NCBI RefSeq assembly: GCF_002571385.2 | Contig: NW_019218099.1 | Coordinates: 8,492 to 72,491 of the forward strand | Reading direction: 5' to 3' | Source of the DNA: Stylophora pistillata | Taxonomy: Eukaryota | DNA length: 64,000 nt | Shown: positions 37,449 through 41,451 of the stretch, piece by piece | How positions within the stretch are numbered: the first letter of the stretch is position 1 | How the letters are laid out: each line of letters starts with the position of its first letter | Position numbers and translations under genes: made by a program | Notes under the pieces: generated by a model | Told to the model about the DNA's origin: nothing | The model's database searches: none | What the model saw: only the letters and a program-made list of their open reading frames with translations

Positions 37449-40400
37449 TCACATCAATGGCTTGGCATCGAGTTTTGCTTGAATTTTTCCGGCTTCCTTC
37501 CTCAGTTTTCTTGCTTCGGGCCAGTTTCCCTGCATGGTATAAGCAATCCCAAGAACTGTCAAAGTGCGTACAACTTCAGGATGTTCATCGCCGTGAATAT
37601 TTCTTTGTCCATTCAGAGCCATGTCTAAGAACCGCCGCGCTTGCGTCGTTTCACCCAACGAAAGATACGCATGCCCCAAATCAGTGAGTGTGCTGGCCAC
37701 GTCGCTTGTGAACCGGCGCGTTTCAACTTCGTCCGGGCTGATGGGTGCCGCTGACTGCATGAAAGAGAAGGCTCGCTCAACATAGTCGCGGCTTCGCTCC
37801 TTGAAGCCTAACCCTCCATAGGTAGCGCCTAGGGCTGATAGGGTTCGCGCGTAGTCAAGAGGCTGTTTGTATTCCCCGAATTTCCTTCGTTGCGACTCGT
37901 AAATTTGAATCGCTCTCTCGAGAAGTTCTCTACATCGTTGTGCGTCGTCCAAAGAGCTGCACACATCTGCTAGACGTGTCAAAGTAGACGCTACCTCCAA
38001 GCTAGAGTCGCCATACAGTTGTGTTTCAATGGACAGAACATCTTCTAGAAGTCTCCTACTGGACTCTAAGTTCCCAAAGGAAGCATCAGTGGAGGCTACG
38101 GCCGAGATGGCATGAGCACGACTTTTGGGTCCCAGGCTCTTGGAAGTACTAGCGGCTAAGATGTGATCCAGATGAGGCTTGAGGAGTCTGGCGAGAGTCC
38201 GTGTTTGATTGTCTTGGCCGCAAACGGAAGCTACTCCGTTTATAGTTTTCAAAATACGCGCCGTGCGCTGTTGACAGTGACGAACGGCATCACTAGTCTT
38301 TATCTTCCTAAATTCCTCCTTGATCTGTGACTCACTCTCCTGCAACAAACCACTGACATTGGGCCCGGAGCAGAGGGGAAGGAGCTCGCTATCAGACAAA
38401 TTTTCATGCAAATTCACAGCTTCCTCTTGAGTGACTTCACCAAGGGAATTGCGATATTCTTGCAGTGATCTTTGACCGTCAAAACTCCAAAGCCGGCGAA
38501 ACCACGAGCTTTTGTTGTGTTGTTCTTCTGCCTGGACTAGATACTCCGCCTCTAGCTGCTCCATCGTCCGGGACAAGAAAAGTTGCTGGAACACTGAGTG
38601 CACCAAAGGACTTACTACCACCGTGTCCACCCCTGGTTAGAAATAAATCAAATAACTAGTTGTATAGACCACTTTCATAAATGGCTGCCGGATTAATATT
38701 CTTTTGTTTAATATTAAATTAGCCTTTCTGGCCTCGTTCTCTAGTACAAAATTCAAAAGAATACATTATCTCAAGCGAGGCCAGAAAGGCTAATTTAAAT
38801 CTAAACAAAAGAATATTAATCCGGCAGCCATTTTTGAAAGTGGTCAATAATTGGCCATTTTACGGTTGTGTACTTAGTTGCCACGCCTTTGATTAGGAGT
38901 GAGGTTGAAGGTGACCTTGTTTTGATAGAGACCAGTATCTGGTTAGAATGATAAAGTAATCTATATTTGAAAAGCATCAACCTTTGTAACACAACAAGGT
39001 CACCCTTAGCCTCTCTCCTGTTCAAAGGCTTGGCAACCAAGTAAGCAACTATAAAATGGACTATTAACTGAAAGAATCCACATTCAAATAAGATCCTAAT
39101 TTCCATTGCCTATCCCCTCGAAGGTGTATCAAATTACAAAGCAAATTTACATAATGATCACTCCTAAGAGTCATAAGGTTGAGAACTCTCTTAACCACTT
39201 ATCAAACTCATTCCCAGGGCCTCTCATCTTCCCACCCCCTGGAGCAGAAAGACGAGACCCTGGGAACAAGGATGGCCACTTCTTAGTACCTAATCAAAGT
39301 GTAAGATAGAGTGTTCTATCTTATTTTAAGCACAACAGGTAAAATAAATTTTTAAACTGGTTGACCAATGCTTCTCCTTACTGAATTTTCAAAAAAGTCC
39401 AGGAAATTTTTAGGCAGTTATAAGAGTCACCAATACTAAGGACAGTAAATTTTATTGTTTACTGCCTGAAAAGGAGAACAATTAAGTTATGTAACAATAA
39501 AAATTGCAATAGTAGGTCATTTTACTGTAGAAAGGTGACATTTGTTACTTTTAACTCTAAATAAGCCAACAAACAAAAAAAAAAACACTTTTCTCACCCA
39601 TGGGCTCCATTCTCCTAACAGAAACTAATGGACAAGCTTTTAACATCTCCACAACTCCATCCAACATTTGTGGCATATCAGGCACCTCAGGGTTAAGCAT
39701 GGCTTTGATAGCATTAATGTTATCTTTCACTGCTGTTAAAAAGTTCTCCAAGTTCTTGGCCAGTTTCTTGATTGATAGGAACATCTCTTCTACCTCTTGT
39801 TCTGAGCTATTCTCCTTTTTAACCTCAGTGGGTTTTTGGCTTGGCAGAGCAGGTCCACTGCCTACCACAGGGGGCAGGTTAAAATCTGGCGACCTTAGAT
39901 GTAGAGCAATCAGGGTAACTGGTATTGGCCAATTGGGTGTACAGGTTCCAAGAAAATCAAATGCGTGTAGAAGATGGAAATTTTCTTGCACAAGGTTTTT
40001 AGTTTCCATGCTAACCATGACATATAAGGGGCTTAATTCTGTCTCCCCATTAGCCTTTGTGAAGTTCTGCAGCTCTGATTTAAACTCACTTAAAAAGTCT
40101 AAACTGGAATAGCTGGGATTTTTAAAAGCTTTTGATTGCATGTAATGACCGGCACATGAGAGAGCCAGAGGAATCCTCTTTAGAATTGTCACAATGTCTT
40201 TTGCAACAGTCATCTTGTTTCCTTCCAATCCACTTAACTGTGAAAGAAGTTCTACCCCATCATCCATAAGCAACCTAAAAGAAAAGAAAAGAGATGAAAT
40301 GTTTTAAACAGAATGACCACATTACCTTATTTACCAATGGAGTGATACCAGTAGTGATTAAATTACAAACAGTGACAAATGTAGAGTCTGATTTGATTGT

Positions 40401-41451
40401 GACCAAAAATGGCTTGGGAACTTACAAGTTAATAAAAAAAAACCCAGTTTTGGAAATTTTAAGTACCCTTGTCTGTCTTGCAGCGCTGCTCGTTGCCAAA
40501 GTATATTCTGCAGAAAAGTACTTAGAGAAACCATTTAGATTTAAATGTATTTAGTTTTCCTGCAGTTTCTTACCCTTCATCAACAATGTAAGTATTACTA
40601 ATCATTACATCTCTGTTCACATGGCCATTTCTTGTGACAAGAACTGTTCCATTACCCCAACTTTTTGATGAATCAGTGGAAAACCAGCGGTGAATAACTT
40701 CATCATCTTTAACATTTTCCAAAATTATAATCCAGCCTTGGCTGTCCTTAAGTTTTTCCCTAACAGCATCAACAAAGCAGTCTAGCTGCTCTTCCTTGGA
40801 CAGACTGGAGAAATTCACCCCTTCACCAGCCTTCAGTGTCCAATCACTCTCCAAACATCCAACAGAAATTGCAAACCTTTTAACATCAAAAAGAAGGCTT
40901 TCTTCCGATGAACCATTCAAAGTTCCAAAGAAAAGATTTCCTGGAAGAAACGTGTACTTTTCTTGTTCCTCTCTGGCGAGTTTCTCAGCAAATTTTCGTG
41001 CAAGTTCTGTTCTACCAGACCCTGGACAGCCAACAATATGAAGGACAGTCAACGATCCTTTTCCCTTCAACTGACTATGAAGGGAAGACAGAGCGGAGAG
41101 ATCTCGTTCACGGGGAAGTACGAAATGACTAGGTGTTGATGGCAAATGTTTTACTAGCAGTCGTTTCTTTTCGTGATTTCTGTAGACATAGTAATAAACA
41201 GTGCCAGAGATTCCCAGTGAGCCAAGAACCCAGTATTTCAGGGTTGGATTTTCTTTCCAGGATTTCGGCTCTTCGTCGCTGTCTTTAGAATCTTCCTTTC
41301 TTTCTGCTTCAGACAAAGTACTAGACAATCGACGTGGCTGCATCCTTATCGAAATTCGTCGCAAGTTTACCAGAGTTGTTCGTGTCCTGGAGAAATCAGT
41401 TACTAGGCGCAAACAGCGCGTAATTTGAAAGCTCAAAGTACGCCAGTACAT
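37449..41451 (-). CDS. STAND/NB-ARC-like P-loop NTPase with C-terminal TPRs, N-terminal presequence and TM helix (912 aa)
   Basis: Exons 40574-41451, 39598-40274 and 37449-38632, with matching phases (2, then 1). Motifs HIVGCPGSGRTELA, WIIILENV, GTVLVTRN and RIPLALSCAG. About 42-aa TPRs such as YGDSSLEVASTLTRLADV and HGDEHPEVVRTLTVLGIAY. Confidence 0.88.
38664..39065. mobile_element. Two adjacent palindromic MITEs in intron 2 of the NTPase-TPR gene
   Basis: 38664-38848 is an almost complete hairpin (atagaccactttc...gaaagtggtcaat); 38849-39065 runs aattggccatttta...taaaatggactatt. Confidence 0.75.

What the first reader, a model, noticed from the sequence alone, without database searches (positions are those of the whole stretch)
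37449..41451. Candidate mitochondrial, membrane-anchored NLR-like STAND-TPR protein
Seen: the first ~45 residues (MYWRTLSFQITRCLRLVTDFSRTRTTLVNLRRISIRMQPRRLSS) are Arg/Ser/Thr-rich with one acidic residue. An acidic linker, one hydrophobic segment (YWVLGSLGISGTVYYYVY) and a basic flank follow, then an NB-ARC-like domain and TPRs. Known: STAND-TPR proteins normally carry an N-terminal signalling effector (death fold, TIR, PNP_UDP), and presequence plus stop-transfer helix is the usual route into the mitochondrial inner membrane. NLRX1 is mitochondrial but is a NACHT-LRR protein. Inference: an effector-less STAND-TPR sensor or scaffold tethered in mitochondria, possibly facing the intermembrane space. 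I do not recognise this architecture as described.
Basis: partly seen in the sequence, partly recalled or inferred. Interest (0 to 1): 0.8.

Follow-up and report, generated by a model that had tools for sequence, protein, structure and literature searches.

The report
Membrane-anchored coral STAND-TPR protein, mitochondrial-type leader
An expressed coral gene, also found in sea anemones and jellyfish, encodes an Apaf-1-like switch protein that has, instead of a signalling domain, a leader that looks like a mitochondrial import signal followed by a membrane-anchor helix; its location in the cell has not been shown.

Summary
A three-exon minus-strand gene (41451..37449, 912 codons) is confirmed by RNA. 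Both introns are seen in 3 and 4 of the 4 runs laid, and transcript contigs run unspliced into the 5'UTR, so no upstream effector exon appears.

What the protein contains:
- Residues 1-45 have 10 Arg, 0 Lys and 1 acidic residue.
- Next come an acidic linker, a highly conserved juxtamembrane motif, a moderately hydrophobic Tyr/Gly-rich helix and a basic flank.
- Then a divergent NB-ARC-type STAND NTPase and kinesin-light-chain-like TPRs.
- Pfam NB-ARC is below its cut-off. A family profile, however, matches Apaf-1 over the whole domain, and AlphaFold models hit a STAND-TPR structure, Apaf-1, CED-4, Dark and plant NLRs.

The gene is single-copy in its genome and forms one clade with rows resembling the Nematostella and jellyfish (Sanderia) orthologues. 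The leader's sequence drifts but its basic, acid-poor composition is kept.

Mitochondrial import is a reasonable inference but untested. No targeting predictor was available, amphipathicity is not above shuffles, and the helix is only marginally hydrophobic.

The reference allele has Arg at the Walker A lysine; transcripts from two other studies have Lys.

The scan had noted this same stretch before (s1-791960). I rate it a new variant of a known kind.

The parts
41452..41618 (-). 5'UTR (at least 133-167 nt), contiguous with the genome, with no splice into it
   Evidence: X6 contig reaches 41584 and X8 contig reaches 41618. Depth is about 0 at 41700-41883.
41510..41596 (-). Short upstream ORF in another frame (ATG 41596, stop 41512-41510). 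It is inside the 5'UTR only if transcription starts upstream of 41596.
   Evidence: Sequence and ORF list. Covered by X8 record 11 but not by X6 record 3.
41317..41451 (-). Residues 1-45: Arg/Ser/Thr-rich, acid-poor leader with the composition of a mitochondrial presequence
   Evidence: R 10, K 0, D 1, E 0, S+T 12. Poorly conserved in sequence (majority fraction 0.50) while composition is kept (8.4 basic, 0.8 acidic in 25 anthozoan rows). AlphaFold gives a low-confidence helix at 2-21.
41266..41316 (-). Residues 46-62: acidic linker
   Evidence: Mean 6.2 acidic residues of 17 in 25 anthozoan rows. Disordered in the models.
41236..41265 (-). Residues 63-72: juxtamembrane motif (KSW-K/R-ENP-x-LK), the most conserved piece of exon 1
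   Evidence: Majority fraction 0.92. Recognisable in Nematostella and, in altered form, in Sanderia.
41182..41235 (-). Residues 73-90: moderately hydrophobic Tyr/Gly/Ser-rich helix, the putative membrane anchor
   Evidence: Best Kyte-Doolittle window, 0.79. Majority fraction 0.80. AlphaFold helix 69-96 with pLDDT about 90.
41146..41181 (-). Residues 91-102: basic flank on the C-terminal side of the helix
   Evidence: Mean 5.3 basic and 1.1 acidic residues of 12.
41110..41145 (-). Residues 103-114: LPxxPxH...R motif that opens the NTPase domain. It is shared with the expanded coral paralogues.
   Evidence: H109 and R114 are nearly invariant in 74 rows. Matches to the 41 other own-genome loci begin at about residue 89-140, mostly 98-103.
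41008..41031 (-). Walker A (residues 141-148). The reference allele has Arg (AGA 41013-41011) where the family has Lys.
   Evidence: 73 of 74 rows have K; the window alone has R. The + strand C>T change at 41012 (giving AAA, Lys) is in the X6 contig, the X8 contig and 2 of 6 X22 reads.
40711..40734 (-). Walker B (residues 240-247), with acidic residue Glu
   Evidence: This column holds D 47, E 21, T 1 and gap 5 of 74 rows.
40574..41451 (-). Coding exon 1: leader, anchor and nucleotide-binding domain
   Evidence: AlphaFold model of this exon has pLDDT 81.4. Foldseek hits Sr35, NRC4, ZAR1, CED-4 and Dark.
40275..40573 (-). Intron 1 (GT..AG)
   Evidence: Joint 40272>40572 (cut +2) in X23, X6 and X8.
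39598..40274 (-). Coding exon 2: helical domain (HD1/ARC1-like, with a 'PLAL' motif), first part of the winged helix, and a disordered insertion
   Evidence: No Pfam family reaches its cut-off. In the orthologue model, helices 297-420 are confident and 434-462 is disordered. The domain names come from my own reading of motifs.
38633..39597 (-). Intron 2 (GT..AG), holding two inverted-repeat elements
   Evidence: Joint 38631>39597 (cut +1) in 4 of 4 runs. Inverted repeats found.
37449..38632 (-). Coding exon 3: rest of the winged helix, helical linker and TPR domain; stop at 37451-37449
37467..38051 (-). Kinesin-light-chain-like TPR block (exon 3 residues about 194-388)
   Evidence: TPR_12 6e-29 and TPR_10 5e-20. 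KLC1 7ai4 6e-11 over residues 194-380.
37100..37448 (-). 3'UTR (at least this far)
   Evidence: Stranded read depth of 9-19 continues to the edge of the laid stretch.

Best explanation
SHOWN.
- This is an intact, expressed gene, single-copy for its N-terminal part.
- It belongs to a family whose named members come from sea anemones (Nematostella, Actinostola) and a jellyfish (Sanderia), plus many unnamed coral-like sequences.
- The product is a STAND NTPase of the Apaf-1/CED-4 (NB-ARC) type: a nucleotide-binding domain, a helical domain, a winged helix with an insertion, and a helical linker, followed by about seven kinesin-light-chain-like TPRs.
- It has no effector domain.
- Its N-terminus is a fast-drifting, Arg-rich, acid-poor leader. 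Then come an acidic linker, a very conserved juxtamembrane motif, a moderately hydrophobic helix and a basic flank.

INFERRED.
- The leader is a mitochondrial presequence that takes the N-terminus through TOM and TIM23.
- The helix stops transfer and anchors the protein in the inner membrane.
- The NTPase-TPR body is then left in the intermembrane space. This is the same layout (presequence, single helix, roughly 900-residue P-loop NTPase) as OPA1/Mgm1 or YME1L.
- There the TPR groove would bind a peptide ligand, and the NTPase would act as a nucleotide-dependent switch for oligomerisation at the membrane. It would work as a tethered sensor or scaffold rather than as a recruiter of caspases or TIR partners.
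For: Gene model and expression: as set out in the observation check.

Conservation:
- Full-length natural orthologues of 900-980 aa have the same order of parts.
- The window's exons are 62%, 77% and 84% identical to P0201.
- The anthozoan-like and medusozoan-like rows form one split, 95/87, 35 of the 70 rows kept.
- In the own genome, only this locus matches residues 1-292. The 41 other loci match only from about residue 89-140, mostly 98-103.

STAND / NB-ARC type:
- phmmer relatives P0066, P0080, P0092 and P0119 pass the Pfam NB-ARC cut-off and carry TPR_12.
- Among the 60 best PDB matches shown for the A3 family profile, Apaf-1 is the only full-domain match (1z6t, E 3.8e-8, profile 120-366). 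The others shown are P-loop-only matches or ClpC.
- The AlphaFold model of orthologue P0201 has pLDDT 86 and pTM 0.81. Its Foldseek hits are 6mfv STAND-TPR 3e-9, Apaf-1 8.4e-8, NRC3/NRC4 and KLC TPRs.
- The model of the window's own exon 1 hits Sr35, NRC4, ZAR1, CED-4 and Dark.
- Walker A Lys is kept in 73 of 74 rows, and a Walker B acid in 68 of 74.

Leader:
- In the first 40 residues, at most 1 acidic and at least 5 basic residues occur in 34 of 51 family rows, against 8 of 138 other fetched proteins.
- The leader's sequence majority fraction is 0.50, against 0.92 for the juxtamembrane motif.

Precedents for mitochondrial STAND NTPases (DAP3, RNA12/YME2): a passage in PMC8195603.
Against: - No targeting or topology predictor could be run.
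- The leader's helical hydrophobic moment is not above shuffles: for the window, 13% of shuffles reach it, and only 3 of 27 rows are at or below 0.05.
- The helix has Kyte-Doolittle 0.79 in the window and 0.7-1.1 in other cnidarian rows. On a translocon-type scale recalled from memory its sum is +6 to +8, which is unfavourable. It may therefore not arrest in a membrane.
- Charges around the helix are acidic before it and basic after it. That fits an outer-membrane signal anchor with the body in the cytosol at least as well as an inner-membrane stop-transfer.
- The Pfam NB-ARC, NACHT and AAA_16 models are all below their cut-offs on the window and on P0201, P0050 and P0072.
- The sensor-1 position varies within the family, so hydrolysis may be weak.
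- No localisation data were found. Proteome supplements were closed.
Confidence: 0.45

Rival explanations
1. The protein goes to mitochondria but sits in the outer membrane with the NTPase-TPR body in the cytosol. This could be permanent, as for a TOM70-like signal anchor. Or it could be conditional, as for PINK1: normally imported and turned over, and accumulating on the surface when import fails. It would then be a cytosol-facing sensor platform on mitochondria.
For: The helix is moderately hydrophobic and has a conserved basic C-terminal flank (5.3 basic of 12) and an acidic N-side linker. I recall these as features of mitochondrial outer-membrane signal anchors. STAND sensors with TPRs normally work in the cytosol. 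The layout of leader, spacer, helix and large body is also that of PINK1 (recalled).
Against: Known signal anchors have only a few residues before the helix (recalled). Here about 70 residues precede it, including a leader of net charge +9 whose composition is conserved. No data on turnover or processing are available.
Confidence: 0.2
2. The protein is not mitochondrial. The hydrophobic helix anchors it in another membrane (ER, Golgi, plasma membrane or peroxisome) with the body in the cytosol, and the basic leader has some other role, such as lipid or nucleic-acid binding.
For: Evidence for a presequence is compositional only, and amphipathicity is not above shuffles. Relatives of unknown organism (P0119, P0120, P0146) also have an N-terminal helix before NB-ARC and TPR, so a plain membrane tether is a recurring design.
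Against: With the basic flank on the cytosolic side, about 70 residues with net charge +6 would have to cross the ER membrane without a signal peptide, which is unfavourable (established positive-inside rule, recalled). The N-terminus has no signal-peptide-like hydrophobic core. On the recalled translocon scale the helix is a poor ER anchor.
Confidence: 0.15
3. The protein is imported fully into the matrix, as reported for NLRX1. The hydrophobic helix is not a membrane span but packs on the protein or lies on the membrane surface.
For: The helix has low hydrophobicity in anthozoans (Kyte-Doolittle 0.7-1.1). It is highly conserved in sequence (0.80) and is predicted with high pLDDT. Both would fit a packed helix.
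Against: In the related groups B and C the corresponding segment reaches Kyte-Doolittle 1.2-2.4, the range of true membrane spans.
Confidence: 0.12
4. A decaying gene or pseudo-NTPase without function, as the degenerate catalytic motifs might suggest.
For: The reference allele has Arg at the Walker A lysine. The sensor-1 position is variable. Pfam NTPase models are below their cut-offs.
Against: The open frame is intact across three exons, correctly spliced polyA RNA is present in two studies, and stranded reads support it. The exon 3 relatives are 92% to 53% identical over 97-100% of the exon for P0001-P0027. Walker A Lys is in 73 of 74 rows, and the Lys allele is in transcripts of this species.
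Confidence: 0.03

Closest known systems
Apaf-1 / CED-4 / Dark (metazoan NB-ARC apoptosome NTPases)
   Same: Same type of nucleotide-binding domain, helical domain and winged helix. Apaf-1 is the only full-domain PDB match among the 60 shown for the family profile. CED-4 and Dark are among the top fold hits of the window's exon 1 model.
   Different: There is no CARD. TPRs replace the WD40 repeats. The N-terminus is a leader plus hydrophobic helix. Pfam NB-ARC is below its cut-off. CED-4 is held at mitochondria through CED-9 (recalled), not by an anchor of its own.
Expanded cnidarian NACHT/NB-ARC-TPR 'NLR-like' repertoire (Hamada et al. 2013, as described in passages of PMC4083563 and PMC7642931)
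   Same: NB-ARC-type NTPase with C-terminal TPRs in cnidarians. 41 paralogous loci in this genome share the LPxxPxH motif and the NTPase at 24-36% identity.
   Different: Those genes are lineage-specific expansions with Death, DED, CARD, TIR or glycosyltransferase N-termini (passages). This gene is single-copy, conserved across cnidarian classes, split by conserved introns, and carries a leader plus anchor. It falls below the Pfam thresholds that such surveys use, so it was probably not counted (inference).
PH0952-type archaeal STAND with TPR sensor (PDB 6mfv)
   Same: Best whole-chain fold match of the orthologue model (E 3e-9, 821 aligned columns): NTPase, helical domains and a TPR sensor.
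   Different: 12% identity and no membrane anchor. The clade assignment of 6mfv was not examined here.
NLRX1
   Different: NLRX1 is NACHT-LRR. Here NACHT scores 14.8 bits against a cut-off of 26.7, the repeats are TPRs, and there is a hydrophobic helix after the leader.
OPA1/Mgm1 and YME1L (inner-membrane P-loop NTPases facing the intermembrane space)
   Same: Same order of presequence, single helix and large P-loop NTPase body (recalled). This is the model for the proposed topology.
   Different: Unrelated NTPase classes (dynamin, AAA+ protease). No homology was seen in any search here.
DAP3/mS29 and RNA12/YME2 (mitochondria-associated STAND-like NTPases)
   Same: Named as mitochondrial STAND NTPases in a passage of PMC8195603. 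In that paper's reference list, the title of Hanekamp and Thorsness 1996 calls YME2/RNA12 an integral inner-membrane protein.
   Different: No Pfam hit to the DAP3 or RNA12 families at E up to 0.1. They belong to a different STAND branch and have no TPRs.
Helix-NB-ARC-TPR_12 proteins of unknown organism (P0119, P0120, P0146)
   Same: An N-terminal region with one hydrophobic helix, then NB-ARC and TPR_12. P0119 passes the NB-ARC Pfam cut-off (50.9 bits) and carries TPR_12; P0120 and P0146 were read by eye only.
   Different: About 30% identity over the NTPase only. Their N-termini are Lys/Glu-rich and not presequence-like. Their source organisms are unknown.

Membership tests
STAND NTPase, NB-ARC (AP-ATPase) type | Walker A GxxxxGK[T/S] | tested here: met
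   Lys in 73 of 74 aligned rows and T/S in 74 of 74. The reference allele of the window has Arg (AGA 41013-41011). The X6 contig, the X8 contig and 2 of 6 X22 reads carry the Lys codon.
STAND NTPase, NB-ARC (AP-ATPase) type | Walker B: hydrophobic strand ending in an acidic residue | tested here: met
   The window has WIIILEN. This column holds D 47, E 21, T 1 and gap 5 of 74 rows.
STAND NTPase, NB-ARC (AP-ATPase) type | Pfam PF00931 NB-ARC at its gathering score | tested here: not met
   13.0 bits for window exon 1 and 15.9 for P0201, against a cut-off of 23.5. The phmmer relatives P0066, P0080, P0092 and P0119 do pass.
STAND NTPase, NB-ARC (AP-ATPase) type | Full-domain sequence-profile similarity to a solved NB-ARC protein | tested here: met
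   A3 profile positions 120-366 match Apaf-1 residues 126-362, E 3.8e-8. The other matches among the 60 shown cover only the P-loop region or are ClpC.
STAND NTPase, NB-ARC (AP-ATPase) type | Fold of nucleotide-binding domain, helical domain and winged helix, followed by a repeat sensor | tested here: met
   Foldseek on the orthologue model: 6mfv STAND-TPR 3e-9, Apaf-1 3sfz 8.4e-8, NRC3/NRC4. On the window exon 1 model: Sr35, NRC4, ZAR1, CED-4, Dark, mixed with ORC/Cdc6. TM-scores are low (0.2-0.4) because the chains differ in length and domain arrangement.
STAND NTPase, NB-ARC (AP-ATPase) type | N-terminal effector or adaptor domain (CARD, Death, TIR, CC and the like) | tested here: not met
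   No Pfam domain lies before residue 95. RNA shows no other first exon. The models give only a low-confidence helix, disorder, and one long helix.
Mitochondrial bipartite signal (presequence plus stop-transfer helix) | Arg-rich, acid-poor, hydroxyl-rich N-terminus | tested here: met
   Window residues 1-45: R 10, K 0, D+E 1, S+T 12. 34 of 51 family rows meet the composition criterion, against 8 of 138 background proteins. The criterion is my own rule of thumb.
Mitochondrial bipartite signal (presequence plus stop-transfer helix) | Amphipathic helix in the leader | tested here: inconclusive
   The maximum 11-residue moment is 0.86 in the window, but 13% of shuffles reach it. Only 3 of 27 rows are at or below 0.05. 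AlphaFold draws helix 2-21 at pLDDT under 50.
Mitochondrial bipartite signal (presequence plus stop-transfer helix) | Membrane-spanning hydrophobic segment after the leader | tested here: inconclusive
   Kyte-Doolittle 19-residue mean is 0.79 in the window, 0.7-1.1 in cnidarian rows and 1.2-2.4 in groups B and C. The octanol-scale sum is favourable and the translocon-scale sum unfavourable; both sets of scale values are recalled.
Mitochondrial bipartite signal (presequence plus stop-transfer helix) | Positive call by a trained predictor (TargetP, MitoFates, DeepTMHMM) or measured localisation | not testable with these tools
   No such predictor is offered, and no localisation data were found. 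Supplements of papers were closed.
NLRX1-like NACHT-LRR | NACHT domain and LRRs | tested here: not met
   NACHT scores 14.8 bits against a cut-off of 26.7. There is no LRR family; the repeats are TPR_12/TPR_10.
DAP3 / RNA12(YME2) mitochondrial STAND-like NTPases | Match to their Pfam families | tested here: not met
   Neither family is listed at E up to 0.1 for any of the three exons.
Nephrocystin-3 / kinesin light chain TPR proteins | TPR_12/TPR_10 repeats; for NPHP3, the PF24885 domain at its cut-off | tested here: inconclusive
   TPR_12 scores 100.5 bits (cut-off 30.1) and TPR_10 71.2 bits, so both are met. TPR_NPHP3 scores 38.6 bits against a cut-off of 100, so it is not met. KLC1/2 are the best PDB sequence matches of exon 3 (6e-11). 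The repeat type is shared; membership in those families is not.

The most novel reading that the evidence does not exclude
The anchor helix is itself the effector. This would be a mitochondrial 'resistosome-like' or import-surveillance STAND. Either it accumulates on the organelle when import fails, as PINK1 does, or it sits in the inner membrane. Ligand binding by the TPRs would then drive NTP-dependent oligomerisation that bundles the conserved small-residue/Tyr-rich helices and perturbs a mitochondrial membrane. Sensing would be coupled directly to mitochondrial permeabilisation or signalling, without caspase-recruiting domains. On this reading it is an ancient animal cell-death or quality-control switch, found so far in cnidarians and possibly in other animals (groups B and C, of unknown taxon, have the same N-terminal design).
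Probability: 0.1. Interest if true: 0.9.

Novelty: new variant of a known kind. Interest (0 to 1): 0.6.

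Why it matters
STAND/NLR proteins are usually described as three parts: an effector, an NTPase and a repeat sensor.

Here a deeply conserved, single-copy cnidarian member replaces the effector with what looks like an organelle import signal plus a membrane anchor. If the localisation is confirmed, it would be an Apaf-1-type switch built into mitochondria, the organelle at the centre of animal cell death, in a lineage where apoptosis, symbiosis and bleaching are closely linked.

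The gene also scores below the Pfam thresholds on which published cnidarian NLR censuses rest, so it has probably been overlooked.

The Nematostella orthologue makes the question directly testable by transgenesis and knock-out.

Tried and rejected
- Pfam and NCBIfam on the single exons gave only sub-threshold P-loop hits for exon 1 and nothing for exon 2. phmmer of exon 1 against PDB gave only marginal hits, NRC1 at E 0.051.
- The word-indexed protein search could not reach full-length relatives from exon-sized queries. With P0050 and with alignment A1 it returned anthozoan orthologues and exon-sized ORFs, but no named bilaterian protein.
- The ESM Atlas search gave only STAND/NB-ARC/AAA_16 clusters at 0.86-0.89. 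These are leads, not evidence.
- The taxa of groups B and C (P0076, P0083 and others; P0058, P0065 and others) could not be learned.
- In the tree, groups B and C do not join the cnidarian family, so I do not count them as orthologues.
- I expected a strong amphipathic moment in the leader and did not find one above shuffles.
- Model coordinates are not exposed, so I could not test whether the helix packs on the body.
- Literature searches found no description of a presequence- or membrane-anchored NB-ARC-TPR protein: NB-ARC + TPR + cnidarian + transmembrane (5 papers, none on this); STAND + NB-ARC + 'mitochondrial targeting' + tetratricopeptide (0); the four accessions (0); NLR / 'mitochondrial presequence' / NB-ARC, where none of the 12 papers listed of 1,279 held the term 'mitochondrial presequence'. 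One search supplied the two cnidarian NLR papers read as passages. One search supplied PMC8195603 and PMC13581612, read as passages. All papers were seen as search listings or 'find' passages only. Supplementary tables, where proteome lists would be, were closed.
- Rejected: a signal peptide (no hydrophobic core at the N-terminus) and a pseudogene.

Full report
OBSERVATION.

The ORF list and the minus-strand sequence give a three-exon gene.
- Exon 1 runs from the ATG at 41451 to 40574.
- Exon 2 is 40274-39598.
- Exon 3 is 38632-37449, with the stop TGA at 37451-37449.
- Both introns are GT..AG.

Each exon was searched by reference, and natural full-length orthologues from the databases stood in for the whole protein.

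RNA EVIDENCE.

The organism is a coral: two of the holding studies carry the label 'coral metagenome'. I laid two raw-read stranded RNA runs (X22, X23) and two polyA contig runs from two other studies (X6, X8) on 37100-42600.
- The joint 38631>39597 (cut +1, CT..AC on the + strand) is seen in 4 of 4 runs.
- The joint 40272>40572 (cut +2) is seen in 3 of 4 runs (not in X22, which has little depth there).
- Both joints are exactly the predicted introns.
- One X6 contig (1992 nt) runs from exon 3 through exon 2 and exon 1 on to 41584. An X8 contig reaches 41618. Depth falls to 0-0.27 at 41700-41883.
- No joint enters exon 1 from upstream. An in-frame TAA (41520-41518) lies within the transcribed 5'UTR. 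The ATG at 41451 is therefore the start, and no effector-encoding first exon is seen.
- Read direction fits a minus-strand RNA. The neighbour on the + strand (from 41816; IU_nuc_hydro, 2.4e-24) is read in the opposite direction, so the two genes are divergent and about 365 bp apart.

N-TERMINUS.
- Residues 1-45 hold 10 Arg, 0 Lys, 1 Asp, 0 Glu and 12 Ser+Thr.
- Residues 46-62 are acidic.
- Residues 63-72 are a juxtamembrane motif.
- Residues 91-102 are basic.

The hydrophobic segment is the most hydrophobic 19-residue window of exon 1, but its Kyte-Doolittle mean is only 0.79. With scale values recalled from memory, an octanol-type sum is favourable (-4) and a translocon-type sum is unfavourable (+8). 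It is best described as a moderately hydrophobic, Tyr/Gly/Ser-rich helix. AlphaFold draws it as one long helix (69-96, pLDDT about 90) and draws a low-confidence helix at 2-21.

WHAT THE BODY IS.

Pfam on the window's exons gives the following:
- Clear TPR_12 (6e-29) and TPR_10 (5e-20) in exon 3.
- Nothing in exon 2.
- In exon 1 only sub-threshold P-loop hits: AAA_16 E 0.0016, NACHT E 0.025, NB-ARC E 0.062 (13.0 bits against a cut-off of 23.5).

Three further lines place it among NB-ARC-type STAND NTPases.
1. An exhaustive phmmer search with exon 1 found 381 proteins at E up to 0.001. Of the six more distant long hits scanned (P0052, P0066, P0077, P0080, P0092, P0119), P0066, P0080, P0092 and P0119 pass the NB-ARC cut-off and carry many TPR_12 repeats; P0052 and P0077 do not reach it.
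2. A profile of 74 aligned exon-1-type sequences (A3) matches Apaf-1 over the whole domain (1z6t, profile 120-366 against residues 126-362, E 3.8e-8). The other matches among the 60 shown cover only the P-loop region or are ClpC.
3. Fold. An AlphaFold model of the closest natural full-length orthologue, P0201 (913 aa; the window's exons are 62, 77 and 84% identical to it), has mean pLDDT 86 and pTM 0.81. Its best Foldseek hit is the crystal structure of a STAND protein with a TPR sensor (6mfv, 3e-9). Kinesin-light-chain TPRs, Apaf-1 (3sfz, 8.4e-8), NRC3/NRC4 and SAMD9 follow. A model of the window's own exon 1 (pLDDT 81.4) hits Sr35, NRC4, ZAR1, CED-4 and Dark, mixed with ORC/Cdc6.

Exon 3 matches kinesin light chains best among solved structures (6e-11).

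CATALYTIC MOTIFS.

In the 74-row alignment:
- The Walker A lysine is present in 73 rows. The one exception is the window, which has Arg (AGA, 41013-41011).
- The T/S after it is in 74 of 74 rows.
- The Walker B acid is D in 47 rows and E in 21.
- The sensor-1 position varies.

The Arg is an allele, not a property of the gene. The + strand C>T change at 41012, which makes AAA (Lys), is carried by the X6 contig, the X8 contig and 2 of 6 X22 reads.

This answers the scan's other note on this stretch (s1-791960, 'catalytic motifs degenerate but gene intact'). The family keeps its nucleotide-binding motifs, and the assembly carries a Lys-to-Arg variant.

THE FAMILY.

Full-length orthologues with the same order of parts are:
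- Nematostella XP_001631469.2, 'uncharacterized protein LOC5511079', 900 aa.
- A partial Actinostola protein.
- A Sanderia malayensis protein of 980 aa.
- Three 909-932-aa proteins from transcript assemblies.

Many exon-sized ORFs from genome contigs match exon 1 and exon 3 (40 rows covering 94-100% of the exon, apart from one 57% fragment, at 92% down to 28% identity). Many of the exon-1 ORFs end at the same place as the window's exon 1, so that intron is old.

In a maximum-likelihood tree of the NTPase part (70 of 74 rows kept), the anthozoan-like and medusozoan-like rows form one split with support 95/87 (35 rows). Group labels are mine: they rest on resemblance to the named Nematostella and Sanderia proteins, because most rows have no organism on record.

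In the window's own genome only this locus matches residues 1-292. The 41 other loci match only from about residue 89-140 (mostly 98-103), at 24-36% identity, mostly in long open frames. These are the expanded coral NB-ARC-type repertoire described in the literature (passages of PMC4083563 and PMC7642931).

Two further groups of unknown organism (B: P0076, P0083, P0088, P0106, P0116, P0124, P0135; C: P0058, P0065, P0067, P0071, P0073 and others) also have a basic N-terminus and a hydrophobic segment (Kyte-Doolittle 1.2-2.4) before the same LPxxPxH motif. They fall on the other side of the tree, so I do not count them as orthologues.

IS THE LEADER A PRESEQUENCE?

For:
- In 25 anthozoan rows the aligned segment 1-45 is poorly conserved in sequence (majority fraction 0.50). 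It still holds on average 8.4 basic and 0.8 acidic residues, against 13.8% acidic residues in the NTPase part.
- The linker has 6.2 acidic residues of 17.
- The juxtamembrane motif (0.92), the helix (0.80) and the flank (0.80) are at least as conserved as the NTPase (0.77).
- With my own rule of thumb (at most 1 acidic and at least 5 basic residues in the first 40), 34 of 51 family rows pass, 13 of 18 rows of groups B and C pass, and 8 of 138 other fetched proteins pass.
- Drifting sequence with a held composition is what presequences show (established knowledge).

Against:
- The helical hydrophobic moment does not exceed that of shuffles. For the window, 13% of shuffles reach it, and only 3 of 27 rows are at or below 0.05.
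- No trained predictor is available here.
- No localisation data were found.
- A processing-peptidase site near '...RRLSS' is my reading from a recalled motif and was not tested.

TOPOLOGY.

If the leader is a presequence, a helix after it usually acts as a stop-transfer signal. The body would then face the intermembrane space, as in OPA1/Mgm1 and YME1L (recalled). I take this as the single most likely case.

The acidic N-side, the basic C-side and the modest hydrophobicity of the helix fit an outer-membrane anchor with a cytosolic body equally well. A PINK1-like conditional arrangement is also possible. With so weak a helix, full import into the matrix cannot be excluded either.

KNOWN AND NEW.
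- Mitochondrial STAND-type NTPases are known: DAP3 and RNA12/YME2 are named in a passage of PMC8195603, and NLRX1 is recalled. This protein matches none of those families.
- Cnidarian NB-ARC/NACHT-TPR proteins are known as large, lineage-specific expansions with death-fold, TIR or glycosyltransferase N-termini.
- Searches for a presequence- or membrane-anchored NB-ARC-TPR protein, and for the accessions of the Nematostella orthologue, found nothing.
- Transmembrane effectors on prokaryotic STANDs are mentioned only in a figure legend of PMC13581612.

I therefore file it as a new variant of a known kind: an NB-ARC-type STAND-TPR whose N-terminal module is a conserved leader plus anchor.

VERDICT.
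- The architecture and its conservation are shown.
- The mitochondrial reading is plausible (about two in three over all orientations) but untested.
- The intermembrane-space orientation is a best guess.
- Interest 0.6.

Noticed in passing
window 41011-41013 (variant at 41012): Walker A Lys/Arg polymorphism. The assembly has AGA (Arg). PolyA transcript contigs of two other studies (X6, X8) and 2 of 6 X22 reads have AAA (Lys), the residue found in 73 of 74 family rows.
   Followed up: yes
window 41510-41596, minus strand: A 28-codon upstream ORF in another frame, with an ATG in a good context. It lies inside the 5'UTR if transcription starts upstream of 41596 (X8 contig reaches 41618; X6 contig ends at 41584).
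   Followed up: partly
window 38663-38849 and 38848-39066 (intron 2): Two inverted-repeat elements: 74-nt arms 93% complementary, and 80-nt arms 80% complementary. RNA word-depth is very high (up to about 11,000 in X6) and many loose ends occur at their borders. They look like high-copy MITE-like repeats transcribed elsewhere in the genome.
   Followed up: partly
window 41816-42193, plus strand: First coding exon of a divergently transcribed inosine-uridine nucleoside hydrolase gene (IU_nuc_hydro, 2.4e-24). Its ATG is about 365 bp from the ATG of the STAND gene, so the two probably share a bidirectional promoter region.
   Followed up: partly
G000, 41 loci, for example C8:170933-171442, C115:53424-53924, C939:72506-73015 (L002-L004): An expanded set of paralogous NB-ARC-type loci, mostly long single open frames (up to 2478 aa). 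They share the LPxxPxH motif and the NTPase with this gene, but not its N-terminus.
   Followed up: partly
proteins P0076, P0083, P0088, P0106, P0116, P0124, P0135 (group B); P0058, P0065, P0067, P0071, P0073, P0059, P0060 (group C): Exon-sized ORFs from large eukaryote-like contigs of unknown organism. They carry the same design: a basic, acid-poor N-terminus, a clearly hydrophobic helix, LPxxPxH and a P-loop. The leader-plus-anchor module may therefore be more widespread among animal NB-ARC-type proteins.
   Followed up: partly
window 37371 to 38660: One X8 contig joins 37371 to 38660 (skipping 1288 nt, TT..AG, with only 21 letters on the short side). It ends at the border of the intron repeat and is most likely an assembly chimera rather than a splice form.
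   Followed up: no
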